In this document: positions 10,281 through 60,903 of the stretch, piece after piece
Layout: every line of letters begins with the position of its first letter
Position numbering within the stretch: position 1 is the first letter of the stretch
Virus record (IMG/VR): IMGVR_UViG_3300042473_001265
Span: 276,173-340,172 of that record
Strand: one strand, 5' to 3'
DNA length: 64,000 bases
Translations under genes and position numbers: made by a program
The notes under the pieces: model-generated
The model's database searches: none
Told to the model about the DNA's origin: nothing
The model's input: only the letters and a program-made list of their open reading frames with translations

Positions 10281-11864
10281 TTGGCTATTGTACAAATTTC
10301 GCGAATTACCCAGCGTAAAGGGTTACAAGAAGATCTACCGCAATTGGCAGGCGCTGAATTGGGATGGAGTATCGACGAACGCAGATTGTTCATTGGTAAC
10401 GGAACATTGGAAGAAGGTGCTCCAGTAATTGGTAATACAGAAATTCTCACTGAATTTTCTGACTTATTGTATCTGGTGCAAGATTATGTATATTCGGGCC
10501 AAGAAGCCACCGGATACACAGTACAAACAGGTGCAACACCCGGAACTCCGGTTCAACTGTCCTTGCAAAACTGGATGGATCAATTTGCCACAGTCAAAGA
10601 CTTTGGTGCAGTTGGCAACGGTGTTGCTGACGACACTGCGGCCATTAACCGCGCACTTTATCAATTGTACTGTAGAGAAGTGAATCCTGCAATTCGTAGA
10701 AGTTTATTCTTTCCAGCTGGCATTTACAAAGTTTCAGGCACTATTGTTATTCCACCCTATGCCACACTGATTGGCGAAGGCCCCAAGAACAGTATTATTC
10801 AACTGACAGCAACTGCCACAGCAGTTTACACAATGCAGACTGGCGACAGCCTACAACAGACCGGTGTCAACATTGGCACCAATGGCGCTCAACCTCCAAT
10901 AAGTGTCACATGTGAAAATATGGCCTTTGCCAGTCTCAAAGCAACAGATGTTGCATGTATAGAACAGGCAACTGAATTTGTGTTTAATCAGGTTGAATTC
11001 CTTGGACCATTGACCACTGTTGATTTGACATCGGCTGTGGCCGATATTTCGTGTGTTAAATTTATCAGTACTGCTGCCAATGACACGCATCAGATCAAGT
11101 TTGACAACTGTACATTCTCCGGCTGTACCTATGGCATGCGAACAGATCAGCAGGTGCGTGGTATTGACTTTACTGGATCACATTTCTCCACACTGTTCGA
11201 AGGCATACTGGTTGAGCCAAACCCCCTGGGTTCTGCCTATGACCCGCGTGGTATTGGCATACAAAGTTGCGACTTTGATACTATCTATGCTCGCGGCATT
11301 GTGTTTGAAGTGGAACGCAATGCCACTGCACAAAATACATTCGGTGATGTCGGCAACCACTTTGGTGGTGTCACACAGCCCTACACTGCCATTATTGATT
11401 TTGTATCGCCCAACAACATCAGCGTTGGCGATATTTTTGATCGACCAGACCAATATGCCACACTGTATCCCAGAGTTGATTTGAATGGCACTGCCAGCAT
11501 TGCGTTTACCAATGGTCAACAGTTGGCCATGGGTCCGTATGTGCGAGAATCTGGCCTCACAGCAACATTGAACAACAATGTAACTTCGCCCACTGCTGCT
11601 TTTTCTTACAGTGAACTTGACACCTGGTCACTCAACATTGATTACAGCATTTCTAGAAGCACTGCATATAGAACTGGCAGAATTACTGTTGTTTTATTTG
11701 ACGGCGCCGGTGCGCTAACATACACTGATGATTTTTCTGAAAATACTTCTACTGGCATCACGCTGACAGTGTCACAGACCGGTAATGAAATTTTTGTAAA
11801 CTACGTCAGCACAAATACCGGCACCGGTGGATCGATAACCTACAGCATAAACCATATACATTGA
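10281..11864 (+). CDS. Tail/baseplate-associated protein: Mtd-like N-terminal anchor plus pectate-lyase-3-like beta-helix
   Basis: PQLAGAELGWSIDERRLFIGNG; VKDFGAVGNGVADDTAAI; late motif CTAAATA at 10251. Confidence 0.75.
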   Translation: MAIVQISRITQRKGLQEDLPQLAGAELGWSIDERRLFIGNGTLEEGAPVIGNTEILTEFSDLLYLVQDYVYSGQEATGYTVQTGATPGTPVQLSLQNWMDQFATVKDFGAVGNGVADDTAAINRALYQLYCREVNPAIRRSLFFPAGIYKVSGTIVIPPYATLIGEGPKNSIIQLTATATAVYTMQTGDSLQQTGVNIGTNGAQPPISVTCENMAFASLKATDVACIEQATEFVFNQVEFLGPLTTVDLTSAVADISCVKFISTAANDTHQIKFDNCTFSGCTYGMRTDQQVRGIDFTGSHFSTLFEGILVEPNPLGSAYDPRGIGIQSCDFDTIYARGIVFEVERNATAQNTFGDVGNHFGGVTQPYTAIIDFVSPNNISVGDIFDRPDQYATLYPRVDLNGTASIAFTNGQQLAMGPYVRESGLTATLNNNVTSPTAAFSYSELDTWSLNIDYSISRSTAYRTGRITVVLFDGAGALTYTDDFSENTSTGITLTVSQTGNEIFVNYVSTNTGTGGSITYSINHIH

Positions 11865-19644: not shown

Positions 19645-19673
19645 TTGACCCAAAATCGCCATTCTGCTATAAT
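19645..19673 (+). promoter_or_regulatory. Sigma70-type early promoter
   Basis: TTGACC-17 nt-TATAAT. Confidence 0.9.
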
Positions 19674-19679
19674 ACAGTT

Positions 19680-19913
19680 ATGAAATTAGATGTTAACGAA
19701 ATTTTGCAGTGGGCCGGCGCTGTATTCATAGTGGCCGGGCATAGCCTGAACGCCATGGGCCCGGAGGCTTACCCCTACAATATACTTACATTCTTTGTGG
19801 GAACAATACTGTTTCTAGCATGGACTATTCGTGTTGCAAATAAACCACAAATGTTTGTGAATCTTGTAAGTGTAGCCATTGGCTTTTCTGGGCTGGTAAA
19901 AGCATTTGGTTGA
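19680..19913 (+). CDS. Small membrane protein (three hydrophobic segments)
   Basis: Start moved to ATG 19680, 6 nt after the -10; stop TGA lies in the next -35. Confidence 0.7.
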   Translation: MKLDVNEILQWAGAVFIVAGHSLNAMGPEAYPYNILTFFVGTILFLAWTIRVANKPQMFVNLVSVAIGFSGLVKAFG

Positions 19914-19938
19914 CTCAAAATTGCCATTCTGCTATAAT
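19910..19938 (+). promoter_or_regulatory. Sigma70-type early promoter
   Basis: TTGACT-17 nt-TATAAT; spacer nearly identical to 19645. Confidence 0.9.
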
Positions 19939-19968
19939 TAATGCATAAACAGCAAACAGGAGCCAGAG

Positions 19969-20193
19969 ATGATCAAGCAATTTGTCCAAGTTAGTGCCCA
20001 CAGAGACAGCAACAATTTTGCTCATTGCAGTAATCTAAGCCTGATGGCTGATCGCGATATGAGCGCCACACAGGCCCTGCACTACCTGCAGGTCATGGCC
20101 GATGACTATGCCCAGCGCGGATATGCCATCGAATGGATCCGCGAAGACTTTGATGCAGTGTACGAAGAAATGTACGGAGAATTGTTTGCCTAA
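19969..20193 (+). CDS. Hypothetical protein
   Basis: SD CAGGAG and own promoter. Confidence 0.75.
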   Translation: MIKQFVQVSAHRDSNNFAHCSNLSLMADRDMSATQALHYLQVMADDYAQRGYAIEWIREDFDAVYEEMYGELFA

Positions 20194-20199
20194 TTTTGG

Positions 20200-20228
20200 T
20201 TGACCCAAAATTGCCATTCTGCTATAAT
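20200..20228 (+). promoter_or_regulatory. Sigma70-type early promoter
   Basis: TTGACC-17 nt-TATAAT. Confidence 0.9.
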
Positions 20229-48185: not shown

Positions 48186-48338
48186 TTTGTCCTAACTAGA
48201 ACTTTTTGAAGAGATAGATCAGCAAAAATTGCTGCGTTGCACAAAAATCATAAATAAGTGTGTTATAATAACAACCATAGGATGCCGCAATAAGGCGGGT
48301 CTTATTTTCAGTAAACTCGCTTAAATTAGGAGAAAATT

Positions 48339-48620
48339 ATGTTTACAACCGACTCATTCGTGGACACCGTCCAAACAGCCAAAAAAACCTGGATCAAAAC
48401 TTTCATCACAAACAATCACATTGCCGAGTCAATGAATCATTTTGTTGACAGTCAAGCTGACTACACCAAAAAAGCATTCAAAGCAACCACTGATGCTGCA
48501 CAAGAAATTGCTGCTGAAACAGTCAAAGCTGCACAGGCTGCTGCCAAGTTTGACTATTCCAAATTTGGTGAAGGTATCATGAAGGCCTACTCTGCTCAAA
48601 GCACAGCCAAAGCCAAGTAA
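48339..48620 (+). CDS. Ala-rich amphipathic helical protein, phasin-like
   Basis: SD AGGAGA; late and extended -10 promoter motifs upstream. Confidence 0.6.
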   Translation: MFTTDSFVDTVQTAKKTWIKTFITNNHIAESMNHFVDSQADYTKKAFKATTDAAQEIAAETVKAAQAAAKFDYSKFGEGIMKAYSAQSTAKAK

Positions 48621-48638
48621 TATCCAGTTCAAAACCGC

Positions 48639-48688
48639 TTGACCAATGGATCCAGTTCGTGTACACTAGGTGCATGAACTGGATTTTT
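48639..48688 (+). repeat. Terminator-promoter element, copy 1
   Basis: TTGACC-17 nt-TACACT inside a hairpin ATCCAGTTC...GAACTGGAT followed by a T-run; 45/50 identical to 49511-49560. Confidence 0.85.
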
Positions 48689-48723
48689 TCTTGAGTGTAC
48701 ACAAACAAACAAATGGAGTCGAT

Positions 48724-49473
48724 GTGTCTGTAGATAATTTTGTAGTGTTAGACAGTGTGTATGGTAAATTTATTGTGGCCAGAACCTGTTTGTTCCAGGC
48801 CGAAGCCTTGGTCAAGACCGGCCGTACCCACATCGAAAGTGAGTTGGCCAATATTTTTGCATTGATCAACACACTGTCCGATGATGCAGTGATTGTGGAT
48901 GGTGGAGCCAACATTGGATTCTTCACTGTGCCTGTGGCCCACAAAACACAGGGCCGCGGCATTAGGATCATTTCGTTTGAACCACAACGACAATTGTTCC
49001 ATGCCTTGGGTGGCAGTTTGGCCTTGAACGGATACGATCATGTGTATCTACACAACCGTGGACTTGGCGCCAAACCCGGCATCGGCACTTTGCCCAAAGT
49101 GGATTACAGTCGCATAGAAGATTTTGGCACAGTGTCTTTGAACGATCAAACCAAACTCATTGAAGACAGCTGGATGGCAGACCGTTTGGTTGACATTGTA
49201 AGCATTGATGACATGCATTTGCCCAGACTGGATTTCTTCAAATTGGATGTTGAAGGATACGAAGTTCCAGCGTTGACCGGAGCTCTCAACACAATCAAAC
49301 AATATCGTCCGTGGATTTGGGTTGAGTATTTCATCACCGGAACTGAACCAATCAAAGCAGCCCTGGCAGACCTTACCGATTATTCTTTTTATTTGGTTGA
49401 TTACCAAAACATGTTGGTTGCTCCCAAAGAACGGTTGGCCAACATTTCCACAACAGGACTGCAACAAGTGTGA
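48724..49473 (+). CDS. FkbM-family SAM-dependent methyltransferase
   Basis: VDGGANIG, FEPQ, KLDVEGYE; start moved to GTG 48724 after GGAG. Confidence 0.9.
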   Translation: MSVDNFVVLDSVYGKFIVARTCLFQAEALVKTGRTHIESELANIFALINTLSDDAVIVDGGANIGFFTVPVAHKTQGRGIRIISFEPQRQLFHALGGSLALNGYDHVYLHNRGLGAKPGIGTLPKVDYSRIEDFGTVSLNDQTKLIEDSWMADRLVDIVSIDDMHLPRLDFFKLDVEGYEVPALTGALNTIKQYRPWIWVEYFITGTEPIKAALADLTDYSFYLVDYQNMLVAPKERLANISTTGLQQV

Positions 49474-49510
49474 CAACAGCAACACAATTGACCATTTGGG
49501 TTGCCTGCAC

Positions 49511-49560
49511 TTGACCAATTAATCCAGTTCGTGTACACTAGATACATGAGCTGGATTTTT
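49511..49560 (+). repeat. Terminator-promoter element, copy 2
   Basis: Direct repeat of 48639-48688. Confidence 0.85.
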
Positions 49561-49637
49561 TTGGATTTACACAAACCAATTCTGGTTGACCAATCAAGTT
49601 CAGTGGTAATACACCATCAACATTTAAGGGTATTGAA

Positions 49638-50324
49638 ATGAAACATCGTATTTTAACTGCTGTGGCATTGGCTGCTGCTATGATGACCACAGGATGCAGC
49701 AACAATCCGCTCAAACCCGGCAGCGGCGCAGACCCCGGTGCCAGTGCTACCACTGCCATCAGTGAACAAGTGGCAGTGAACGACTTTACCCGCATCGGAG
49801 TGCGTATCAAATATAAATTGATCACAGGTGAGCTTGAAAGCATTGAAGCCACTGGATATGCTCCAGTCTGGGGCAACAGTGCATCCGCAGTGCGAGAATC
49901 ATTCCGTGTGGCCGAACTCGAAGCCAAGAAAAGTCTTAACGATTTTATCAATCGTGAAAACATCACCAGCAGCACTTCGGTCAAAATGATCAGTCATAAT
50001 CTGGAGCAGGCCACAGACAACAAGAAAAACAACTTTGTAAGCAATGTGGTCAAGTCCACTGACGAGTTTGCCGAAGTTGAAACGGCTGTCAATCCCAATC
50101 GTATCAACAACAACGAAACCAACACTGCTGTACGCAATGACGCATTGAAAATTGCCAGCACTGTGAACAACACAATCACTGTGAAAGCTTCGGGTATCCT
50201 GGGCGGGCTGTACCTGGTCGAAGGTAAAGTGATCAACAGCGGCAAAACTGTAATGACCGTCTATCGCTGGGACGCTCGGAGCAATGCTGTTCGTCCCACT
50301 GTGCGTTCTGCAATGATGCAGTAA
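49638..50324 (+). CDS. Lipoprotein (LPP20-like)
   Basis: Signal with lipobox TTGC; AELEAKKSL helix. Confidence 0.7.
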   Translation: MKHRILTAVALAAAMMTTGCSNNPLKPGSGADPGASATTAISEQVAVNDFTRIGVRIKYKLITGELESIEATGYAPVWGNSASAVRESFRVAELEAKKSLNDFINRENITSSTSVKMISHNLEQATDNKKNNFVSNVVKSTDEFAEVETAVNPNRINNNETNTAVRNDALKIASTVNNTITVKASGILGGLYLVEGKVINSGKTVMTVYRWDARSNAVRPTVRSAMMQ

Positions 50325-51483: not shown

Positions 51484-52059
51484 ATGGCAAACCAAACAGA
51501 TACAGAATTCAACAAAGACCACACACAGGCCTTGGCCGACATAGGCATGTATGTGCTGATGGGAGAAATCAATGCTGAAACAGTCAAACCGGTGATTGAA
51601 TGGATTTTACACGAAAACTTTGTGTCCAAGAAAAAACGCAAAGAACTCTTGTTGATGATCTGTAGTGAGGGCGGCGATGTACAAGATGCATTTGCCTTGA
51701 TTGATGTGATGCGCAGCAGTCTTATTCCTGTAAAGACAGTGGGCTTGGGAATGATTGCCAGTTCGGGACTGTTGATTTTTCTTGCTGGCAGTGCTGGACG
51801 CCGTGTGTTGACTCCAAACACTTCGATACTGAGTCATCAATTCTCTTGGTACAACGAAGGCAAGGTTCATGAGTTATTTGCCACTATGAAAGAGTTTGAA
51901 CTGACTCAACACCGTATGGTCAAGCACTATCAAGAATGCACTGGGCTTGATGAAGAAAACATTCGTAAAAATTTACTACCACCACATGATGTATGGCTCA
52001 CTGCCGAAGATGCATTAAGACTCCGCATCTGCGATAGCATTTCAATACTTCAGCGCTGA
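51484..52059 (+). CDS. clpP: Divergent ClpP-like protease
   Basis: ICSEGGDV, IASSG (Ser), SHQF (His), DVWLTAEDAL. Confidence 0.85.
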   Translation: MANQTDTEFNKDHTQALADIGMYVLMGEINAETVKPVIEWILHENFVSKKKRKELLLMICSEGGDVQDAFALIDVMRSSLIPVKTVGLGMIASSGLLIFLAGSAGRRVLTPNTSILSHQFSWYNEGKVHELFATMKEFELTQHRMVKHYQECTGLDEENIRKNLLPPHDVWLTAEDALRLRICDSISILQR

Positions 52060-53600
52060 CGTTTACGGCCAAACATTGGCACATTATCTCTCGGAGGTTT
52101 CACAACTTCTGTCTCGTCTTCGTCGCCGCCGGCTCTAGCAGTAACTCTTGAGCGTTTTTGTGTCACTGCATCTAGGTCGGCAGCATTTAGATTTGCAGGT
52201 TCTTGCCCAGTCCCAGCGGCATCCGCATCATACGGTTCCATACTGGGTTCAGACCTGGCACCTTTGGGTTTGAGTTTGAAACTGAATCCGCCTTTGGTAG
52301 GGTTAACGCCGCCAGATTTTGATTCTATAGTAACTTCGCCATCAAGTTTTGCAGGCCATTGAGTGTTGAAAATCAGCGTGTTGCCAGATGCTGTGGTATA
52401 CTGCTGAATGAAATTGTAATCCAACACTTCCAGCACAACAGCTTGAAATTCAGGGACTGCTCCGCTGTTCACAATGTTCATCACAGCAGCTTTGGTCACA
52501 TAGGTAAGTTTTCCACCGTCACTGCCTTTGCTGTCTAACTTGGCAAACAGTGGCTCGTACTTGGGCATGGCTGTGCCATTTTTTAAACTGTCTGACACCT
52601 GGGCCACAATATCTTTTGACCAAGGAAGGAATGGTTGAAAGTCTGCAGGGATCGCGTCAGGTCCCAACCGCTGGTTCAACAAATTCATGACCTGGAACAC
52701 TTGACTCACAGTCCATGGCTTGGGTAAATTTTCGTTTTGACACAGCTCAATCAAATCAATTGCTGTTTGGTATTGAGTCTTTGAACGCAGATGATCAGGA
52801 ATCTTTAAGCTGCTCACACTGGGTGCAGCGCCGCCGCCGGTGCCCTTGCTGCTGATGTTTAGTGTGTGTGCATTTTCTGGATTGGTAACTGAAGCAAAAC
52901 TGTCAGCAATGGGATTATTTTGTTCACTGGGAAAGCTCAATACCAGGCTCATCATATCTGTGCCCAACCAGGCTAAAAACTGGTCACGCGATGCAAATTT
53001 GGATTGATTGTAGACCAATGCCAGCACACCAAGATATTCCCCTGCGTAATCCACAATGGCTTTTTTTAGCTTGTCGTTTTTGCGAATTTCGTCAGGCATC
53101 ACAGCAGGATTGCCAGCCATGATATTCTGTGCCATGACGATGACTGCTTGTCCGTATTCAGTTGATTGTAGCACTGGATTATTCACAATGGCCGCACCAA
53201 ACTCATCTGCTGGAATGGCCTGATCAGTAATACCAATCTGTGCTGGTTTGACCAATACACCTTCTTTGCTGGTCTGCCCAGGTGCTTGCGCTCCGGGCTT
53301 GGCGCTGCTGCCACCAAATTCAGCAGTTTTTCTAAAGTTCGAAAGCGGCCATTGTTTTCCATCGGCGTCGACTGCTTTGATGCTGCCTTGGAATTCGCCG
53401 GCTGCTTTCATCTTTAAGAATCTGTCAGCTTCGGCGGGAGCCAACACAACTTCGGCGCCTTCTTTTTCGGTATAGAATGGCCGTTTATTTTGAATGTGCG
53501 CAATAAATGCGTCAAAGCGTTCGGGATACTTGGTGATCTCACCCGGGCTCAGAGTTGCTTCCTGAAGCAAATCATCTAGTATGTTGATTAAATCTCTCAT
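52050..53600 (-). CDS. Large hypothetical protein with LLQEA leader, possible head-packaged protein
   Basis: 516 aa; late motif GATAAGTA 4 nt upstream. Confidence 0.7.
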   Translation of the reverse strand: MRDLINILDDLLQEATLSPGEITKYPERFDAFIAHIQNKRPFYTEKEGAEVVLAPAEADRFLKMKAAGEFQGSIKAVDADGKQWPLSNFRKTAEFGGSSAKPGAQAPGQTSKEGVLVKPAQIGITDQAIPADEFGAAIVNNPVLQSTEYGQAVIVMAQNIMAGNPAVMPDEIRKNDKLKKAIVDYAGEYLGVLALVYNQSKFASRDQFLAWLGTDMMSLVLSFPSEQNNPIADSFASVTNPENAHTLNISSKGTGGGAAPSVSSLKIPDHLRSKTQYQTAIDLIELCQNENLPKPWTVSQVFQVMNLLNQRLGPDAIPADFQPFLPWSKDIVAQVSDSLKNGTAMPKYEPLFAKLDSKGSDGGKLTYVTKAAVMNIVNSGAVPEFQAVVLEVLDYNFIQQYTTASGNTLIFNTQWPAKLDGEVTIESKSGGVNPTKGGFSFKLKPKGARSEPSMEPYDADAAGTGQEPANLNAADLDAVTQKRSRVTARAGGDEDETEVVKPPRDNVPMFGRKRQR

Positions 53601-53643
53601 CTTGTACTTATCTCAATTGCCTGTATACGAGCAAATTGCTCAG

Positions 53644-53672
53644 TTGACTATTGCACAGTTTGATGTTACAAT
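53644..53672 (+). promoter_or_regulatory. Sigma70-type promoter for clpP
   Basis: TTGACT-17 nt-TACAAT. Confidence 0.75.
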
Positions 53673-53700
53673 TGTTTATTGAACAACAACAAGGAATTTC

Positions 53701-54291: not shown

Positions 54292-54299
54292 AATAACAG

Positions 54300-54328
54300 T
54301 TGACCAATAAATCCATTTGTCGTATAAT
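54300..54328 (+). promoter_or_regulatory. Sigma70-type early promoter
   Basis: TTGACC-17 nt-TATAAT. Confidence 0.88.
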
Positions 54329-54352
54329 TAACACTTAGCAACAAGGAGTCGT

Positions 54353-54526
54353 ATGGCAGGCAAAGCAAAATCATGTTATCTTTCGGTAACTCAAATTGAC
54401 ACCAGGAAAACTGTGTTGAACCGAATGTTTTTTAAAATGGCCGACCTTAATGATTTTGTGAAAACTGATGAATTCAAAGCAAAATATCCTCCCGAACAGT
54501 ATCAAGTAACCAAAGAAATCTATTAA
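54353..54526 (+). CDS. Small hypothetical protein (57 aa)
   Basis: SD AAGGAG after promoter; not in ORF track. Confidence 0.7.
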   Translation: MAGKAKSCYLSVTQIDTRKTVLNRMFFKMADLNDFVKTDEFKAKYPPEQYQVTKEIY

Positions 54527-54697
54527 ATGATTTTCAATCCCATTATTAATCCTAGAAAGAAAACCATGACTGTTCCTACCACAATCCGCACTGCCACTGG
54601 CGGCACAATTACCTATACCAAAACAGGGCTGATTCATCGCTCCAATGGCGCATATTCTGGAAAAATTGCTGCACTGGAAAAACCACCAAAAAAGTAA
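54527..54697 (+). CDS. Small hypothetical protein
   Basis: Abuts previous stop; followed by a terminator. Confidence 0.5.
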   Translation: MIFNPIINPRKKTMTVPTTIRTATGGTITYTKTGLIHRSNGAYSGKIAALEKPPKK

Positions 54698-54713
54698 TAC
54701 TTTTTACTACTAA

Positions 54714-54738
54714 AAAACCCGTCTGATTGGCGGGTTTT
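54714..54738 (+). terminator. Intrinsic terminator
   Basis: AAAACCCGTC/GGCGGGTTTT stem. Confidence 0.8.
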
Positions 54739-54744
54739 GTTTTG

Positions 54745-54773
54745 GTTGACTCAAAATGCTCTTTTTGCTATAA
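54745..54773 (+). promoter_or_regulatory. Sigma70-type early promoter
   Basis: TTGACT-17 nt-TATAAT. Confidence 0.9.
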
Positions 54774-54804
54774 TAGTGGTATAGTAAGTAAAAAGGAGCG
54801 TGAA

Positions 54805-54993
54805 ATGGACTACACCAAACACCTGGAACTTGTCACCAATTGGGGCATGTACCACAACATCCAGGGCGGCATGCTGGAAACTTTACAGGCCATGCAGGCA
54901 TGTGGGTCAGACGAACTGCACCGCGACGAGCGCCTGGCCGTGCGTGAATTGATGGCAGGCTTTGGCCAATTGCTGGCGCCAGTTGACCAATAA
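54805..54993 (+). CDS. Hypothetical protein
   Basis: Start moved to ATG 54805; ends VDQ* across the next -35. Confidence 0.7.
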   Translation: MDYTKHLELVTNWGMYHNIQGGMLETLQAMQACGSDELHRDERLAVRELMAGFGQLLAPVDQ

Positions 54994-55011
54994 TTCCCAA
55001 AGTGCTATAAT
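54983..55011 (+). promoter_or_regulatory. Sigma70-type early promoter
   Basis: TTGACC-17 nt-TATAAT. Confidence 0.9.
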
Positions 55012-55041
55012 AGTGGCATAGTAAGTAAAAAGGATGTCAAT

Positions 55042-55371
55042 ATGAACGCAACTGAACTGGACTCTAAAGCCGCACCGTTTGCATGGCTCGCCGCCAGAGA
55101 TGCAGCAATAAAAAGTTATGCTGCCAGCACATTGTACACTGAAGCTCAAAAAATTCGTGCAGAGCGCATGAAGTTGGGACTGGAGATGGTGTACTCCGTT
55201 AAGAGTGCTTTCCTCACTTATCGCAAGAAGTTTGTGACTATTAAATTGGATCAAGCTCAAGTGCGCGACCGTAAGACACTGGCTTTGCTGGAACAAGATT
55301 ATACTGCACAAGGCAACATTAGCAAAGTAATTACCGCACAAGGCATCACTTATCGTATTGCCCGCAGTTGA
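55042..55371 (+). CDS. Hypothetical protein
   Basis: Own promoter and SD; stop TGA lies in the next -35. Confidence 0.75.
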   Translation: MNATELDSKAAPFAWLAARDAAIKSYAASTLYTEAQKIRAERMKLGLEMVYSVKSAFLTYRKKFVTIKLDQAQVRDRKTLALLEQDYTAQGNISKVITAQGITYRIARS

Positions 55372-55396
55372 CTAATAATTCCCAATCGGTTATAAT
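55368..55396 (+). promoter_or_regulatory. Sigma70-type early promoter
   Basis: TTGACT-17 nt-TATAAT. Confidence 0.9.
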
Positions 55397-55426
55397 AGTG
55401 GCATAGTAAGTAAACAGGAGCAGACA

Positions 55427-55681
55427 ATGATTGTTAAAACAGGTGATGTGATTCGCAGTTACGATTTCAAACCCATGCTGGGTCGTGAAGATTGCTTTGT
55501 GGAAGGTATGGTAATCGAAGCCACTGCCGAGCAAGGTTACGATGCTTATAAAATCCGTGTGACTCGGGACTCCTGGTCAGATGCTGAAGACAAAGGTCGT
55601 TTTGGCAAAGTCATCTTTGTGCCTGTGGCAGTGGCCTACAACGACTTTCCGGGTCGTGTGATGAATCTGAGCCGTGTCTAA
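55427..55681 (+). CDS. Hypothetical protein
   Basis: SD CAGGAG. Confidence 0.75.
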   Translation: MIVKTGDVIRSYDFKPMLGREDCFVEGMVIEATAEQGYDAYKIRVTRDSWSDAEDKGRFGKVIFVPVAVAYNDFPGRVMNLSRV

Positions 55682-55686
55682 AACGG

Positions 55687-55715
55687 TTGACTAATATTCA
55701 CCAAAGTGCTATAAT
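55687..55715 (+). promoter_or_regulatory. Sigma70-type early promoter driving the paralogue array
   Basis: TTGACT-17 nt-TATAAT. Confidence 0.9.
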
Positions 55716-55745
55716 TAACACTTGAACAGCAACAAGGAATCGACT

Positions 55746-55946
55746 ATGACACGATATGTTCACATTGTTTATGTCCACCCCGTAGAACTTGGTCTGCCCA
55801 ACCTGTCGAAGGTCAAGTCGGAACAAGAATTTGACACTTGGAAACAGGCAATGGGGTATGTTGAACACTTCAATGCTCACGCAAAAGACGGTGTTGAGGC
55901 CGTGTACTACGGCAGGGTCAATGATGCCACAGGAGAATTAGAATGA
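55746..55946 (+). CDS. Hypothetical protein
   Basis: Start moved to ATG 55746 after AAGGA. Confidence 0.7.
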   Translation: MTRYVHIVYVHPVELGLPNLSKVKSEQEFDTWKQAMGYVEHFNAHAKDGVEAVYYGRVNDATGELE

Positions 55947-56155
55947 ACATGAGCTATTGTATGTTTCAAAATACCGCAACTGATCTGCGGCACTGTCTTG
56001 AGAGCATGGATGCAGCCGAGACCCTGGCTGAACTGGAACTGAGCCGCGACGAAAAACGCAGCTACGATCTCATGCGAGAATACTGCGAAAACTTCCTGAA
56101 CATTGCTGAACGACTGGATGATGCTGACGCTGACGCTGTTGGAGTTGCGAAATGA
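55943..56155 (+). CDS. Hypothetical protein (MSYCMFQNT motif)
   Basis: ATGA-coupled. Confidence 0.7.
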   Translation: MNMSYCMFQNTATDLRHCLESMDAAETLAELELSRDEKRSYDLMREYCENFLNIAERLDDADADAVGVAK

Positions 56156-56397
56156 ACGAACGAATTCTAGAACTGTTGAAACAGGCATCTAAACTTGCCA
56201 ACACCGATGACAACAAAGATATTGACCGCAATTTTGATATGATTGTGGCAGAAAAGTTCGCCGAACTGATTGTGAAAGAATGTTTGAATATTGTTATGCT
56301 TACACACAACGAAGGCAATGCAGATAATTTTTCATACGACGATGCACTTGATCATGTGTTTAGTAACATGAAAGAACATTTCGGAGTTGAATCGTGA
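56152..56397 (+). CDS. MNERI/KFAELIV/HFGVE family paralogue 1
   Basis: All three conserved blocks present. Confidence 0.85.
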   Translation: MNERILELLKQASKLANTDDNKDIDRNFDMIVAEKFAELIVKECLNIVMLTHNEGNADNFSYDDALDHVFSNMKEHFGVES

Positions 56398-56597
56398 AAG
56401 TGACCCATCCCTACACCTTGATAAAGCGGCGTATTGATGTTGTGGCCCGAGTGCCAGCCTGGGCGGTTGGAGAGATAAACAAAGGCGATCTGGTCATACG
56501 TCTGGATGCTCAAACTGTTTTTTTGCGAGATAAAGGCAGATACAAGGTGGGCGAATCCTACACCGAGTTCTGGGGCTACACAGGAGAAAATGCATGA
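56394..56597 (+). CDS. Hypothetical protein
   Basis: GTGA/ATGA-coupled; not a family member. Confidence 0.65.
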   Translation: MKVTHPYTLIKRRIDVVARVPAWAVGEINKGDLVIRLDAQTVFLRDKGRYKVGESYTEFWGYTGENA

Positions 56598-56923
56598 ACA
56601 AACGAATTCAACAACTTGCCGAACAGGCTACATCTTACAATAACAGTGATGGTTGGCTTTTTGATAAAGAAAAGTTCGCTGAACTGATTGTGGCTGAATG
56701 TTTGGCACAGGTTGCCCGGGTGGATGACATGTTGGAAGATGAGCCTGCACAACATGCGGCAGTGGCCTGGGTGGCCCGGTCGATTGCCGACCATTTTGGA
56801 GTTGCGAAACCCCAGTCAGACTGGGATCAAGAAGCAGCTGAATTTATTGCCGCAGAGGATAAAAAGGTTGCCAGCAGATACGGATATGTCCCAAAACTTC
56901 ATCCATCAGAATGGAAAGACTAA
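56594..56923 (+). CDS. Family paralogue 2, with C-terminal extension
   Basis: MNKRIQQLAEQA, EKFAELIVAEC, DHFGVAK. Confidence 0.85.
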   Translation: MNKRIQQLAEQATSYNNSDGWLFDKEKFAELIVAECLAQVARVDDMLEDEPAQHAAVAWVARSIADHFGVAKPQSDWDQEAAEFIAAEDKKVASRYGYVPKLHPSEWKD

Positions 56924-57138
56924 TGAACGAACGAATTAAAGAACTTTATACACAAGTCTGTATGGAACAGAATCTTCCGTTCACACTTGAACATAACAGT
57001 GCGTATATGTTAGATGCATTTGCAGACAAGTTCGCCGAGTTGATTGTGCGGGAATACTCTTACGATGTGATGAATTTACACGGGGCGAGTCCAGAGCGAG
57101 TAGCGATGGCTGCTAAACATTGGGAAGTTGAACTATGA
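56923..57138 (+). CDS. Family paralogue 3
   Basis: MNERIKEL, DKFAELIVREY, KHWEVEL; start moved to 56923. Confidence 0.8.
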   Translation: MNERIKELYTQVCMEQNLPFTLEHNSAYMLDAFADKFAELIVREYSYDVMNLHGASPERVAMAAKHWEVEL

Positions 57139-57365
57139 ACCTACGAATTAAACAACTGGCTGAACAATGCTGGGACAAGCGTCCAGAAGGCCAATTACAT
57201 TTTGACAACGAAAAATTCGCCGAATTGATTGTTCAGGAATGTATATCAGTTATTAATACTAAGGCTACCGAAGTTCCTGTTGAAGATGAATATGAAAGAA
57301 TGTGGAAGATGGGAACGGAATTTGCTGTATATCAGATTGATAAACATTTTGGAGTTGAAGAATGA
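57135..57365 (+). CDS. Family paralogue 4
   Basis: MNLRIKQLAEQC, EKFAELIVQEC, KHFGVEE. Confidence 0.85.
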   Translation: MNLRIKQLAEQCWDKRPEGQLHFDNEKFAELIVQECISVINTKATEVPVEDEYERMWKMGTEFAVYQIDKHFGVEE

Positions 57366-57622
57366 ATCAACGAATTCGAGCTCTTGCTGAAAAAGCAAAC
57401 ATTGAGTTTACCTATGACCCAACAGAGACACCTGTCAGAGCATTTGTCGAGTGTTGGGAAGATGATCTTGAAAAGTTCGTTGACATGATTGTGAAGGAAT
57501 GTATCGCTCAATGTGAAAGCCAGAACACAGTCATTACCACAGATATAGGCACAGAAGCGTGGGGAGAAATTTCTGATGCGGTAGAGCAGATTAAACGACA
57601 TTTTTACGGAGTTGAAGAATGA
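57362..57622 (+). CDS. Family paralogue 5
   Basis: MNQRIRALAEKA, EKFVDMIVKEC, HFYGVEE. Confidence 0.85.
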   Translation: MNQRIRALAEKANIEFTYDPTETPVRAFVECWEDDLEKFVDMIVKECIAQCESQNTVITTDIGTEAWGEISDAVEQIKRHFYGVEE

Positions 57623-57855
57623 ACTTACGAATTCAACAACTTGCCGAACAGGCTAGGCAATATGCTGAATCCAAAATGCATCTAACCGGATGGAACTATA
57701 TTGCCGAGTATAACGAAAAGTTCGCCCAGTTGATTGTGCGGGAATGTATGGATGCAGTGGGTGATGGACCAATGCAAAGACCAGAAATTCAAAGGATCAA
57801 AGCCAAGTTTGGGGTTGAGTATTACAAGCCAATTGAAAAAGCATTTGGGAGTTGA
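57619..57855 (+). CDS. Family paralogue 6
   Basis: MNLRIQQLAEQA, EKFAQLIVREC, KFGVE. Confidence 0.85.
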   Translation: MNLRIQQLAEQARQYAESKMHLTGWNYIAEYNEKFAQLIVRECMDAVGDGPMQRPEIQRIKAKFGVEYYKPIEKAFGS

Positions 57856-57858
57856 ATC

Positions 57859-58254
57859 GTGAACATAACTGTATACAGCTGGAATCTACTAAAAGAATCC
57901 TGTGAGCGTTGGTCGGTGCCCAGAGACTTTGCCGACCCCATGCTGAACTATCTGGTGTATGGTTATGCGCCAGGTAGTTGTTTCTCTGCGGTGTTGGCCA
58001 ATGACTTTTTTAGAGCAATTGGATCCAGCCATCCCAGTAACACTGTGGAAGCATTCAAGGCCTTGTCTGGTTGGATCCAAGATACTATGCCTCGTGAAGC
58101 ATTCGGCAGCTACGAAACTGTTCGACAGTGGTGTCAGCTTGATGCTGGGACTCGCCGAGCGATCCTTGAACGTCAGGGGCTGATCTATACCCAGCATGAA
58201 GAAGTGTTCAAGATTCTACGGAATGAGCATGCTGTGGAACCTGTATTATACTAA
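57859..58254 (+). CDS. Hypothetical protein
   Basis: GTG start after GGAG; PGSCFSAVLANDF. Confidence 0.7.
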   Translation: MNITVYSWNLLKESCERWSVPRDFADPMLNYLVYGYAPGSCFSAVLANDFFRAIGSSHPSNTVEAFKALSGWIQDTMPREAFGSYETVRQWCQLDAGTRRAILERQGLIYTQHEEVFKILRNEHAVEPVLY

Positions 58255-58268
58255 CACGGAGTTGAACC

Positions 58269-58568
58269 ATGATGCAAGATTTCATGTATGAGCAAACTCG
58301 AGTCACTGTGACCGACACATGGGATGACGAGATATCACAGTCTGTGATTGCAGCCGCAGTCAATGCGCCTCGAGTCAGCTACAGGATTTATTATTCCCAG
58401 GACAACCTGACCCGTAGGATTTTTGTTCATCGCGGCTGGCCCAACTGCACACCCGCAGAGATTGACGCATTGTTGGGCTTGGGATTTGTATTTGCACAAC
58501 CCGGTGATGCAGACAACATTCCCAACCAAGCCGTAGAGGAACATGAAATTGAAGGAATCGAACCATGA
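58269..58568 (+). CDS. Hypothetical protein
   Basis: SD GGAG; 99 aa. Confidence 0.65.
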   Translation: MMQDFMYEQTRVTVTDTWDDEISQSVIAAAVNAPRVSYRIYYSQDNLTRRIFVHRGWPNCTPAEIDALLGLGFVFAQPGDADNIPNQAVEEHEIEGIEP

Positions 58569-58687
58569 AAGTCTACAAGCACAGCAACGGTAAAACAAGT
58601 CTATTTCCTGAACACATTCCCCAGGGTTGGGTAGTTTTTCTAAATCCCAACACATTTGACATTGTATGGCGTAGGAGTGGATCATGA
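58565..58687 (+). CDS. Small hypothetical protein (40 aa, MKVYKHSNG...)
   Basis: ATGA-coupled at both ends. Confidence 0.6.
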   Translation: MKVYKHSNGKTSLFPEHIPQGWVVFLNPNTFDIVWRRSGS

Positions 58688-58926
58688 CAATTGAACAAGA
58701 ATATCTAGAAAAATACATAAATCCTCGGATTAAAAAATTGTTTGAACAGGCCAATGGACAATTTTACATTTCTCCTGGCAACCAAACTCCGCGATTCGTG
58801 TTTGAACACAACAACATGCTTGATTTTATTGACTTGATTGTGCAGGAATGTGCCCGGATTGCTGACACAGCAGAGCCCTATCAAACCAGCGATTTGATTT
58901 TGAAACACTTTGGAGTTGAATCATGA
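58684..58926 (+). CDS. Family paralogue 7, with N-terminal extension
   Basis: INPRIKKLFEQA, DLIVQEC, KHFGVES. Confidence 0.8.
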   Translation: MTIEQEYLEKYINPRIKKLFEQANGQFYISPGNQTPRFVFEHNNMLDFIDLIVQECARIADTAEPYQTSDLILKHFGVES

Positions 58927-59042
58927 CCGAAGGAGAACGAGCAGGACGCTGGGCTATGATATATCTCTATACGGCGTTGTTTGCTTTATGGTTTAATATT
59001 GTTGCCATTGCGGTTTGGCACATCCGGGAGTGGTTTTTATGA
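58923..59042 (+). CDS. Small membrane peptide (39 aa)
   Basis: ATGA-coupled at both ends; one TM. Confidence 0.55.
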   Translation: MTEGERAGRWAMIYLYTALFALWFNIVAIAVWHIREWFL

Positions 59043-59269
59043 ACGAACGAATTCGAGAACTTGCCGAACAGGCTGGAATTGAATTTACCTATGACCCAAC
59101 TGAGACTCCTATGCGAGCTTTTGTGGAATGTTGGGAAGATGAGATGGCAAAGTTCGCCCAGTTGATTGTGCAGGAATGTGGTCGAGCATTGAATCCCATG
59201 TTGCGTGACATGATCAGTCGCGGCCAGGCCGTAGACATGATTAAACAACATTTCGGAGTTGAAGAATGA
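59039..59269 (+). CDS. Family paralogue 8
   Basis: MNERIRELAEQA, AKFAQLIVQEC, QHFGVEE; start moved to 59039. Confidence 0.85.
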   Translation: MNERIRELAEQAGIEFTYDPTETPMRAFVECWEDEMAKFAQLIVQECGRALNPMLRDMISRGQAVDMIKQHFGVEE

Positions 59270-59778
59270 AATCACATTATACCTGCGGAAAATGTAACCT
59301 GTTGTTAGAAGCAGGTGACAAACATTTTTTTACTCACAGTCTTAAAAAAGTATCTAATAATAGTAATTTAACAGTTATTGGACAATGTAAAGCCTGCGCC
59401 AAACAATATGCTACAAAATGGCGTAGTGACATTAAGGCCAAAGGATTAGTTCGTAGTCAAAAGACAACAATAGCATTAGCAGGTGCAGTTACAGGAACCG
59501 TGTATGTTATCGGTACTGATAGTCCCGGAGCTCCTTATAAAATTGGAATAACTTCGGGATCAGATACTCGAAAAAGAAAAGCAGCATTACAAACAGCACA
59601 CTGGATGGATCTTAAAGAAGTTTGGAAATCAGACTTGTTGTACCGAGCAGATATTATTGAAAAAAAATTACACAAACATTTTGAAAAGAAATGGGTGAGG
59701 GGAGAATGGTTCAATATCACAAAAGACGATATTACCAATATTCCAAACTTAATAGAACATTTTGGTGTGGAAGAATGA
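59266..59778 (+). CDS. Zn-finger plus GIY-YIG (T5orf172-like) nuclease
   Basis: CGKC...CKAC; VYVIG...YKIGIT...KRKAALQT...EKKLH...RGEWF; ends EHFGVEE. Confidence 0.82.
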   Translation: MKSHYTCGKCNLLLEAGDKHFFTHSLKKVSNNSNLTVIGQCKACAKQYATKWRSDIKAKGLVRSQKTTIALAGAVTGTVYVIGTDSPGAPYKIGITSGSDTRKRKAALQTAHWMDLKEVWKSDLLYRADIIEKKLHKHFEKKWVRGEWFNITKDDITNIPNLIEHFGVEE

Positions 59779-60005
59779 GTGACTCCATCATACCCGTAAC
59801 TCAGTTTGCTACCAGCTTCACTGGCGTGCTGCCCATTGCCACTGTGGGCAAAGGTGTTGTCAAACAGGAAAGTTGGCAACAGACCACTTATCCCAATGGT
59901 GCCACGGTCACCAGGATTTATCACAACAGCATTGAAGTGTATGATAACCGTGCAGTTGTGACCCGGCACAATGAACCAAACATCATTGACATATTGATCA
60001 AGTAA
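59775..60005 (+). CDS. Hypothetical protein
   Basis: Start moved to ATG 59775 (ATGA overlap). Confidence 0.6.
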   Translation: MSDSIIPVTQFATSFTGVLPIATVGKGVVKQESWQQTTYPNGATVTRIYHNSIEVYDNRAVVTRHNEPNIIDILIK

Positions 60006-60047
60006 TATTAAAATAACACACCAGGAGAAAAGACGATTTTGCTCTGG

Positions 60048-60076
60048 TTGACCATTAATTCCCGTTCTGCTATAAT
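60048..60076 (+). promoter_or_regulatory. Sigma70-type early promoter
   Basis: TTGACC-17 nt-TATAAT. Confidence 0.9.
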
Positions 60077-60104
60077 ATACACATAAACAGCAAACGGAGC
60101 AGAC

Positions 60105-60263
60105 ATGCAGATGACACCGGAACAGAAGGCAGTAGAGATTGAGCGTTTGACAGCTGAATACGAGTGGCTGACTCTCATCAGCTGTAACGGTCGTTACGGT
60201 GGCAACATTTTTATCAAGCAGGCTGCTATTTCTGAAAAATTGCGTGAGTTAGCCAACGATTGA
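60105..60263 (+). CDS. Small hypothetical protein (52 aa)
   Basis: SD GGAG; stop TGA lies in the next -35. Confidence 0.65.
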   Translation: MQMTPEQKAVEIERLTAEYEWLTLISCNGRYGGNIFIKQAAISEKLRELAND

Positions 60264-60288
60264 CCATTAATTCCCATTCTGCTATAAT
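60260..60288 (+). promoter_or_regulatory. Sigma70-type early promoter
   Basis: TTGACC-17 nt-TATAAT; nearly identical to 60048, including the leader. Confidence 0.9.
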
Positions 60289-60318
60289 ATACACATAAAC
60301 AGCAAACAGGAGAGCCAA

Positions 60319-60534
60319 ATGAGCAAGTTTGAAGTTCGTTTTTTTCGTAGTGAAGATGCAGCATCTTCCAGCTGGCTGGTGACTGAAGTGCTGGCGGACG
60401 ACGGCGAAGGCAATCGCACCAGCGATATCCGTGCTGAATTTGACCCCACCCCTGCGGGGCAGGAACAGGCCCGCGACCTGGCTCATGCGCTGAACCGCGA
60501 AATTGAACAAGAAATCTACGCAGAATTTGGTTGA
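60319..60534 (+). CDS. Acidic hypothetical protein
   Basis: SD CAGGAG. Confidence 0.7.
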   Translation: MSKFEVRFFRSEDAASSSWLVTEVLADDGEGNRTSDIRAEFDPTPAGQEQARDLAHALNREIEQEIYAEFG

Positions 60535-60541
60535 GGCAATT

Positions 60542-60694
60542 ATGAAACCCGTGTCTTTTGTTATACAACTACCGCGTCAGCGTCGCCGAGCTGTGGAACT
60601 GTACAGCCGCGACACGCCGTTCAAATCCCGTGTTGAGCAGTCACGAACAGTGTACACTCGTCGGGTCAAACATGCCAAACAATTACAAGAGTAA
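60542..60694 (+). CDS. Small basic protein, weak ArfA-like pattern
   Basis: TPFKSRVEQSRTVYTRRVKH; start moved to 60542. Confidence 0.55.
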   Translation: MKPVSFVIQLPRQRRRAVELYSRDTPFKSRVEQSRTVYTRRVKHAKQLQE

Positions 60695-60699
60695 ACCGT

Positions 60700-60855
60700 A
60701 TGACTATTCAACATTGGGATTATTTAAAAACTGCAATGGAAGTGCTGGAGTCTGGCCAAGCCAGTGACGCCAACACCATCAAAATACTCAAGATCATGAG
60801 CGAAATCTGTGCAATGAACGCACAAAAGATGACACAGCTTCTGGTTGACCAATAA
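60700..60855 (+). CDS. Small hypothetical protein (51 aa)
   Basis: Ends VDQ* across the next -35. Confidence 0.55.
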   Translation: MTIQHWDYLKTAMEVLESGQASDANTIKILKIMSEICAMNAQKMTQLLVDQ

Positions 60856-60873
60856 TTGCCATTCTGCTATAAT
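60845..60873 (+). promoter_or_regulatory. Sigma70-type early promoter
   Basis: TTGACC-17 nt-TATAAT. Confidence 0.9.
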
Positions 60874-60903
60874 TAATACTTAAACAGCAACAAGGAGTCG
60901 AAA

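What the first reader, a model, noticed from the sequence alone, without database searches (positions are those of the whole stretch)
48639..49560. Duplicated terminator-promoter element bracketing the FkbM gene
Two 50-nt direct repeats (45/50 identical) flank the methyltransferase. Each holds TTGACC-17-TACACT within a 14-15-bp hairpin followed by a T-run. The copy differences inside the stem preserve pairing (T-G to T-A, T-A to T-G). One element could stop upstream read-through and restart transcription, insulating the cargo; the repeats also offer a route for gene gain or loss.
Basis: partly seen in the sequence, partly recalled or inferred. Interest (0 to 1): 0.62.

Follow-up and report, generated by a model that had tools for sequence, protein, structure and literature searches.

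The report
Promoter-terminator cassettes flanking a phage gene
In a 340-kb lake jumbo phage, one short element that probably both stops and restarts transcription was duplicated when a methyltransferase gene was inserted beside it, which matches the "PeSL" gene-shuffling cassettes already described in T4-type phages.

Summary
Two direct repeats (48638-48689 and 49510-49561; 47/52 identical, 62/72 with their tails) bracket an FkbM-family methyltransferase gene (48724-49473). Each has TTGACC-17-TACACT, a 15-17-bp hairpin with the -10 at its apex, and a T-run.

The window is the end of a 340-kb, Gp23-capsid jumbo phage from lake metagenomes, nearest to Rak2/PA5oct/CBB-type phages.

Relatives supply the "before" state: 93-aa gene, one copy of the element, lipoprotein gene, and no FkbM. 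That single copy aligns to both window copies. More distant relatives carry FkbM elsewhere without repeats, and that site lacks FkbM in this genome. FkbM was therefore inserted here with a ~69-bp duplication of the resident element.

Across 19 copies the stem shows compensatory changes (92% paired against 28-44% when slid). The -35 and a -10-like hexamer at 17±1 are always kept. G·U pairs favour the + strand.

Best reading: a composite intrinsic terminator and sigma-70-type promoter. The predicted start lies in the 3' arm, so outgoing transcripts escape termination. This matches the PeSL cassettes of T4-type phages, so it is a new member of a known kind. Transcript ends were not shown, and the RNA contigs were uninformative.

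The parts
48339..48620 (+). Conserved 93-aa gene (no Pfam or PHROG hit) whose transcript the first element should terminate
   Evidence: ORF. No family. 84 relatives in viral contigs, 80 fetched. Covered by contigs in three RNA libraries.
48638..48709 (+). Copy 1 of the composite element (core 48638-48689 plus weaker tail). Its left flank is orthologous to the left flank of the empty site.
48639..48667 (+). Sigma-70-type promoter of copy 1: -35 TTGACC (48639-48644), 17-nt spacer, -10 TACACT (48662-48667). The start is predicted at about A48674.
   Evidence: The start site is inferred from the usual 7-nt distance, not measured.
48648..48689 (+). Hairpin of copy 1 (17 pairs, 5-nt loop, -10 at the apex) followed by TTTTTT (48684-48689): predicted intrinsic terminator for + strand transcripts
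   Evidence: Covariation.
48710..49509 (+). Inserted segment (~800 bp): ribosome-binding site, FkbM gene and 36 nt of 3' flank. Absent from empty-site relatives.
   Evidence: The left edge matches the conserved AAATGGAG upstream of FkbM in relatives.
48724..49473 (+). FkbM-family SAM-dependent methyltransferase gene (249 aa, GTG start)
   Evidence: PF05050 E 1.2e-15. phrog_8156 methyltransferase. 71-100% identical relatives.
49488..49493 (+). Possible relic of a -35 box (TTGACC) carried in with FkbM. Relatives have TTGACC-N17-TATAAT directly after FkbM, but here no -10 follows.
   Evidence: Sequence compared with the downstream flanks. Inference.
49510..49579 (+). Copy 2 of the composite element. 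Its right flank is orthologous to the right flank of the empty site.
49511..49539 (+). Sigma-70-type promoter of copy 2: TTGACC (49511-49516), 17 nt, TACACT (49534-49539). The start is predicted at about A49546.
   Evidence: The start site is inferred.
49521..49562 (+). Hairpin of copy 2 (15 pairs) followed by TTTTTTT (49556-49562): predicted terminator for FkbM transcripts
49586..49614 (+). Decayed second promoter. TTGACC is kept and the -10 is degraded. A relative has an intact TTGACC-17-TATAAT at this place.
   Evidence: Comparison with L020/L027.
49638..50324 (+). 228-aa lipoprotein gene (signal peptide ending in Cys), the original downstream neighbour of the element

Best explanation
Each repeat is a composite regulatory cassette: a Rho-independent terminator with a host sigma-70-type promoter embedded in it. 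The -35 lies just upstream of the hairpin. The spacer forms the 5' arm, the -10 sits at the apex, and the predicted start (A48674 / A49546) lies in the 3' arm. Transcripts arriving from upstream contain both arms plus the U-run and should stop. Transcripts starting inside contain only the 3' arm, cannot form the hairpin, and should run on. One such element originally stood between the 93-aa gene and the lipoprotein gene. An ~800-bp segment carrying FkbM came from another place in this phage lineage, where FkbM has no promoter of its own directly upstream. It was inserted with a ~69-bp duplication of the element. FkbM thereby gained its own promoter (copy 1) and terminator (copy 2), and the lipoprotein gene kept a promoter (copy 2). 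The two direct repeats can now recombine to delete FkbM or release it as a circle. This is how the PeSL cassettes of T4-type phages are proposed to work. Shown here: the repeats, the structure with its covariation, conservation of the promoter boxes, the empty site, the other FkbM contexts, and FkbM's absence from one of those sites in this genome. Inferred: termination, initiation, the start position and the recombination mechanism.
For: Repeats and hairpins. Empty site: in L020/L021, L022/L023, L024 and L091 the 93-aa gene is followed by one element and then the lipoprotein gene. By blastn, 59-67 nt of the single copy align to both window copies, window ~48696-49508 has no counterpart, and synteny holds on both sides. 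Relocation: ten relatives (L005-L014) have FkbM directly after an 88-aa gene with no repeats and with a TTGACC-N17-TATAAT-type promoter after it in most. Their neighbouring genes map mainly to 2-18 kb of this genome. There the 88-aa gene is followed at once by a promoter, with no FkbM. A complete relative (G006) has the single-copy site and FkbM in a third context. Structure: on 19 copies 92.4% of cells pair against 28-44% when slid, 6 of 14 pairs have changes on both sides (25 cells), and 0/500 shuffles reach the covariation score. A G·U pair held in 13 copies fits the + strand only. Promoter: T[TA]GAC plus a -10-like hexamer at 16-18 nt in 19/19 copies, 15/19 with at least 5/6 to TATAAT. The boxes match this genome's own promoter class of 72 strong sites, 65 on the + strand. 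In the related phage PA5oct, TTGAC/TATAATA motifs lie at RNA-seq start sites. Precedent: PeSLs with the stem-loop between -35 and -10 or overlapping the -10, and an ORF flanked by two PeSLs in one phage against a single PeSL in its sister.
Against: No transcript ends or starts were observed. The RNA-library data are assembled contigs from related strains, one of which spans the whole copy-1 hairpin (48649-49056), so they neither show nor exclude termination. The -10 of the window copies (TACACT) is weak, 4/6 to consensus. In FkbM's commonest other context there is no element upstream of it, so a simple PeSL-to-PeSL excision cannot be the donor step, and at least one illegitimate joint is needed. 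The two copies differ by ~14%, far more than this genome differs from its 96%-identical relative. The event is therefore old or the copies have mixed origins, and the crossover point could not be mapped. Only 3 promoter-in-hairpin elements and 9 terminator-then-promoter pairs exist in 340 kb, against ~50 PeSLs in the ~275-ORF genomes of phi1 and RB49.
Confidence: 0.7

Rival explanations
1. The element is only a terminator. The -35/-10 resemblance is incidental, and FkbM is expressed by read-through from the 93-aa gene.
For: The window -10 is weak (TACACT, 9/12 overall). Promoter-like hits in the 10-kb region are no more frequent than in shuffles (21 against 16.5±4.5). One RNA-library contig spans the whole first hairpin into FkbM.
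Against: Loop sequences are otherwise free to vary, yet 19/19 copies keep T[TA]GAC and a TAnnnT-type hexamer at 16-18 nt, with 7 perfect TATAAT. The -35 and the first spacer bases match the genome's own promoter class. Alternative arrangements at the same orthologous site are a GC-rich terminator directly followed by a canonical promoter, so a promoter is needed there.
Confidence: 0.15
2. The repeats are the target-site duplication or ends of a mobile element (transposon, homing-endonuclease cassette or integron-like cassette) that carries FkbM.
For: FkbM occupies at least three different contexts in this phage group. The insertion is flanked by direct repeats that form hairpins.
Against: The ~800-bp insert holds only FkbM and no transposase, endonuclease or integrase. 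The duplication is ~69 bp, far beyond transposase target duplications. The repeat is the resident intergenic sequence of the empty site and was not brought in by the insert. FkbM in its other contexts has no such ends.
Confidence: 0.05
3. The sequence is conserved mainly because the 3' arm and T-run encode the start of a small protein (MNRIF...). The hairpin is secondary.
For: In L062, L074, L077 and L081 the ATG in the 3' arm opens a 70-86-aa lipoprotein ORF.
Against: In the window copies, and in L027, L065, L066 and L091, the same ATG opens only 6-31 codons, and four relatives have no ATG in the arm, yet the hairpin is kept. The non-coding 5' arm co-varies with the 3' arm.
Confidence: 0.05

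Closest known systems
PeSL (promoter-early stem-loop) regulatory cassettes of T4-type phages: RB49/phi1, T4/PST, KVP40/nt-1 (Arbiol et al. 2010, PMC2839356; Comeau et al. 2014, PMC4122927)
   Same: A sigma-70-like promoter combined with a stem-loop terminator in one short intergenic element. The stem-loop commonly lies between -35 and -10 or overlaps the -10. A variable ORF is flanked by two copies in one phage, against a single copy between the same neighbours in a sister phage. The elements lie in variable regions rich in early promoters. The host phage has a Gp23-type capsid.
   Different: The host is a 340-kb lake jumbo phage nearest to Rak2/PA5oct/CBB-type isolates (capsid 64-71% identical), not one of the phages in which PeSLs were described. 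Only two near-identical copies exist rather than a family of ~50. The hairpin is long, of mixed base composition with several G·U pairs, and not G-run/C-run. FkbM's commonest other context has no upstream element. Mini-circles and promoter or terminator activity were shown experimentally for PeSLs, not here.
Intrinsic (Rho-independent) terminators that overlap the next promoter in compact phage and bacterial genomes
   Same: A stable hairpin followed by a U-run directly after a stop codon. The next transcription unit starts within a few bases.
   Different: Here the promoter is nested inside the hairpin instead of following it, so the predicted start lies in the 3' arm. The tandem form, terminator then promoter, occurs at the same orthologous site in other relatives and at 9 places in this genome.
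Early promoters of Pseudomonas jumbo phage PA5oct (Lood et al. 2020, PMC7318152)
   Same: TTGAC and TATAAT(A) boxes used by host RNA polymerase. That paper reports 32 such promoters at RNA-seq start sites and 36 stem-loop terminators.
   Different: The passages read do not describe composite or duplicated promoter-terminator cassettes. There is no DNA similarity to this locus.

Membership tests
PeSL cassettes | Sigma-70-like promoter (-35, ~17 nt, -10) | tested here: met
   TTGACC-17-TACACT in both copies. The boxes are kept in 19/19 orthologous copies.
PeSL cassettes | Stable stem-loop within or beside the promoter (between the boxes or overlapping the -10) | tested here: met
   15-17-bp hairpin from the spacer across the -10, -24 to -25 kcal/mol, z about -6. 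Covariation.
PeSL cassettes | The stem-loop terminates or attenuates incoming transcription | tested here: inconclusive
   Hairpin plus 6-7 T fits an intrinsic terminator. RNA-library contigs break near the elements, but one spans the first hairpin, and contigs cannot show ends.
PeSL cassettes | The promoter is active | not testable with these tools
   Needs a reporter assay or 5'-end mapping. Only sequence conservation is available.
PeSL cassettes | Intergenic, next to ORFs that differ between close relatives: two copies around an ORF against one copy in a sister genome | tested here: met
   The genes after the 93-aa gene differ widely among 80 relatives.
PeSL cassettes | Many similar copies per genome (~50), concentrated in hyperplastic regions | tested here: inconclusive
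   Only 2 near-identical copies, 1 further promoter-in-hairpin element at genome position 243804 and 9 terminator-then-promoter pairs. The promoter part alone is a large clustered family of 72.
PeSL cassettes | The host is a T4-type phage | tested here: met
   Gp23 capsid family PF07068, 328 bits. The nearest isolates are Rak2/PA5oct/CBB-type jumbo phages, a distant branch.
PeSL cassettes | Recombination between flanking copies gives deletions and mini-circles | not testable with these tools
   No joint skipping FkbM was seen in the one DNA run laid. Contigs drop rare variants.
Transposon or IS insertion | A short target duplication (2-14 bp) and an element-encoded transposase | tested here: not met
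   The duplication is ~69 bp of resident sequence, and the insert encodes only FkbM.
FkbM methyltransferase family (PF05050) | Match to the family model above the curated cut-off | tested here: met
   58.5 bits against a cut-off of 22.7, residues 59-202.

The most novel reading that the evidence does not exclude
PeSL-type cassette shuffling also operates in uncultured lake jumbo phages of the Rak2/PA5oct-like branch, using a nested design. The transcription start lies in the 3' arm of the terminator, so one ~50-nt element stops incoming and launches outgoing transcripts. In some relatives the same start would give a leaderless mRNA for a small lipoprotein. In this case the element captured a gene that elsewhere has no promoter of its own directly upstream and turned it into an autonomous, excisable transcription unit.
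Probability: 0.5. Interest if true: 0.5.

Novelty: new member of a known kind. Interest (0 to 1): 0.4.

Why it matters
This is a clean natural before-and-after pair for how large phages move accessory genes. The same gene is found in three genomic contexts. The recipient site exists both empty and filled. The regulatory element duplicated by the event has enough relatives to show stem covariation. It extends the PeSL idea, so far documented in a few pairs of cultured T4-type phages, to abundant uncultured freshwater jumbo phages. It also offers a compact, direction-specific terminator/promoter part that could be tested as a genetic insulator. It does not reveal a new kind of system.

Tried and rejected
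- **More copies.** A search of the whole genome with the element found only the two copies. A strict scan for promoters nested in hairpins found only these two. A third, diverged one at genome position 243804 was seen by eye and folded.
- **RNA evidence.** Three metatranscriptome runs and one DNA run were laid on 3.8 kb. All were assembled contigs from strains 90-97% alike. RNA-library contigs cover the 93-aa gene, the 5' part of FkbM and copy 2 into the lipoprotein gene. Their breaks (48641/48644, 48649, 49509/49512) sit at strain-variable or repeat borders and cannot be read as transcript ends. I draw no conclusion from them.
- **Lipoprotein gene in FkbM-bearing relatives.** No match in five of them, G001-G005, so no single genome of that group gives both states. 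G006 does.
- **Donor lineage.** Capsid identity is ~92% to all relatives tested and is uninformative. Ribonucleotide reductase puts G006 slightly closer to this genome (91% against 84-87%), although G006's FkbM is more distant (59% against 73-77%). This hints at exchange between lineages but does not prove it.
- **Mapping a crossover inside the repeats.** Comparison with empty-site copies gave a mosaic with no clear breakpoint.
- **Database searches.** The phage isolate collection has no DNA match to the locus. Rfam has nothing at the elements. Terminase_6C gave no hit.
- **Not used.** The large protein searches, structure prediction and complex prediction were not needed. No genetic code other than table 11 was used.

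Full report
**What is there.** The window is the last 64 kb of a 340,172-bp virus record, estimated 98% complete. The genome encodes a Gp23-family major capsid protein (PF07068, 328 bits). Its nearest isolates by capsid (64-71% identity) are Sinorhizobium phage Phosso, Vibrio phage 2.275.O, Pseudomonas phage PA5oct and its kin, Xanthomonas XaC1 and Pectobacterium CBB. These are the giant T4-related phages of the Rak2/PA5oct type. The DNA recurs in some twenty lake-water metagenome runs.

The copies lie at 48638-48689 and 49510-49561, 47/52 identical, or 62/72 if the weaker tails to 48709/49579 are included. They are unique in the window and in the genome. Each has TTGACC, 17 nt and TACACT. Each also has a hairpin of 17 or 15 pairs followed by 6 or 7 T. 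The hairpins fold at -25.2 and -24.1 kcal/mol (z -6.0 and -6.8) on the + strand, but only about -16 on the other strand. The gene between them (48724-49473, GTG start behind GGAG) is an FkbM-family methyltransferase.

**The empty site.** They exist.
- Five contigs from related phages (L020/L021, L022/L023, L024), plus L091 and the complete 346,856-bp genome that holds L092, have the orthologous 93-aa gene, one element and then the lipoprotein gene.
- In a multiple alignment, the left flank of copy 1 and the right flank of copy 2 are the two flanks of this single site.
- By blastn, 59 nt (L020) or 67 nt (L022) of the single copy align to both window copies. Window ~48696-49508 has no counterpart, and synteny continues on both sides.
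- The duplicated stretch runs from the C before the -35 to ACACAAAC, about 69 nt (48638-48706 and 49510-49577).

**Where FkbM came from.** Ten other relatives (L005-L014, FkbM 71-80% identical) carry FkbM in a different place. There it follows a conserved 88-aa gene, with stop and start adjacent or overlapping and no repeat. Most of them have a TTGACC-N17-TATAAT-type promoter right after it.
- The genes around it in those phages map mainly to about 2-18 kb of this genome.
- In this genome the 88-aa gene (10551-10748) is followed at once by a TTGACT-17-TATAAT promoter with no FkbM.
- The complete relative G006 has a single-copy site and a more distant FkbM (59%) in a third context, behind a membrane-protein gene.
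- The inserted segment in the window begins at the conserved AAATGGAG ribosome-binding region.
- It ends 36 nt past the stop and takes with it a TTGACC (49488-49493), which looks like the -35 of the promoter that follows FkbM elsewhere.

So FkbM was moved, or acquired from a related lineage, into this site with duplication of the resident element. It changed from a gene with no promoter of its own directly upstream into a unit with its own predicted promoter and terminator. The two copies differ by ~14%, much more than this genome differs from its 96%-identical relative L019, which has the same arrangement. The event is therefore not recent, or the copies have mixed ancestry.

**Is the element functional?** Eighty loci with the 93-aa gene were fetched. 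Downstream of it there are three arrangements:
- this promoter-in-hairpin element;
- a GC-rich terminator immediately followed by a canonical promoter;
- directly the next gene.

The next gene varies widely, so this is a boundary of a variable region.

Nineteen copies of the nested form were aligned. With a 14-pair stem, 92.4% of cells pair, against 28-44% when the partner is slid by 1-3 columns. Six pairs show changes on both sides (25 cells). No shuffle out of 500 reaches the observed pairing or covariation score. One pair is G·U in 13 copies, which pairs only on the + strand and fits an RNA hairpin for rightward transcription.

All 19 copies keep T[TA]GAC and a -10-like hexamer at 16-18 nt, placed at the hairpin apex. 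Fifteen have at least 5/6 matches to TATAAT and seven are perfect. The boxes and the first spacer bases match this genome's own promoter class. That class has 72 strong sites, 65 on the + strand, clustered at 0-40, 100-120, 260-280 and 320-340 kb. Many sit in a conserved promoter/5'UTR/ribosome-site cassette. In PA5oct, TTGAC/TATAATA motifs lie at RNA-seq start sites.

**Mechanism proposed.** The -10 ends at 48667 (49539), so the start should be near A48674 (A49546), inside the 3' arm.
- Incoming transcripts carry both arms and the U-run, and should terminate.
- Transcripts born in the element carry only the 3' arm and should run on.
- Copy 1 would end the 93-aa gene's message and start FkbM's.
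- Copy 2 would end FkbM's message and start the lipoprotein gene's. The older second promoter of that gene (49586) has decayed.

These steps are inferred. The RNA-library contigs available were assembled, came from related strains and cannot show ends.

**How the duplication arose.** A 69-bp duplication of resident sequence is not a transposase footprint, and the insert encodes nothing but FkbM. Homologous integration of a circular intermediate carrying one copy of the element, as proposed for PeSL mini-circles, gives exactly this product. However, FkbM's commonest other context has no upstream element, so at least one illegitimate joint must have preceded it. Template switching during recombination-dependent replication is an alternative. 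I could not map a crossover. I put the circular-intermediate route at about one in three.

**Comparison with what is known.** This is the PeSL concept. PeSLs are composite sigma-70 promoter/stem-loop terminator motifs of T4-type phages. The stem-loop is most often between the boxes or over the -10. They flank ORFs that differ between sister phages, with a single PeSL at the empty site. The differences here are:
- the host lineage, a lake jumbo phage of the Rak2/PA5oct-like branch;
- the small number of hairpin-bearing copies: 2 alike, 1 further at genome position 243804 before a gp32-like gene, and 9 tandem terminator-promoter pairs;
- the form of the stem.

My literature searches found no description of PeSLs in jumbo phages of this branch. 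That is an absence in the searched library only.

**Verdict.** The finding is a new member of a known kind, of moderate interest.

Noticed in passing
L062:2828, L074:2827, L077:2829, L081:2822 (ATG in the 3' arm of the element); window 48674 and 49546: In four relatives the ATG that lies 7 nt after the -10, inside the hairpin's 3' arm, opens a 70-86-aa lipoprotein ORF (MNRIFLL...GC...). This would be a leaderless mRNA whose first codons are the terminator's 3' arm and T-run. In the window copies the same ATG opens only 6 and 31 codons. These small lipoproteins have no tblastn match in this genome.
   Followed up: partly
window 48276-48344 (+): Sub-threshold Rfam match to the ROSE_3 thermoregulator (31.1 bits, gathering score 43, E 7.7e-4) in the 5' leader of the conserved 93-aa gene. 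It may be chance.
   Followed up: no
window 52172-53685 (- strand ORF 52050-53600, 516 aa): This gene is not alignable with the otherwise 96%-identical relative L019, nor with L020, L022 or L024, while both flanks align. It has no Pfam family and only a weak PHROG hit of unknown function. It is a second variable locus 2.5 kb from the finding.
   Followed up: no
whole genome G000, e.g. window 19645-20200 and 54299-60900 (genome 295817-296372 and 330472-337017): Dozens of promoters share a ~60-nt conserved block: GGTTGACC, an AT-rich spacer, TATAAT, a conserved leader and AGGAG. They are almost all on the + strand and sit in clusters. This is a much larger repeat family than the finding itself and a likely substrate for recombination.
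   Followed up: partly
genome G000:C1:243804-243855 (outside the window): A third promoter-in-hairpin element (TTGACG-17-TACACT) shares the apex GTGTACAC with the two window copies and is followed by a T-run. It stands before an ORF that looks like a gp32-type single-strand DNA-binding protein by eye.
   Followed up: partly
window 48736-48780, DNA run X20, record 4: A low-depth contig joins the 5' end of FkbM to the end of the 88-aa gene context. A relative with FkbM in the other position therefore co-occurs in the same lake sample.
   Followed up: no
window 48339-48620: The 93-aa protein has no Pfam or PHROG family, yet it is conserved in more than 80 large viral contigs and is covered by contigs in all three RNA libraries laid. 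It may be an abundant, highly expressed protein of unknown role.
   Followed up: no
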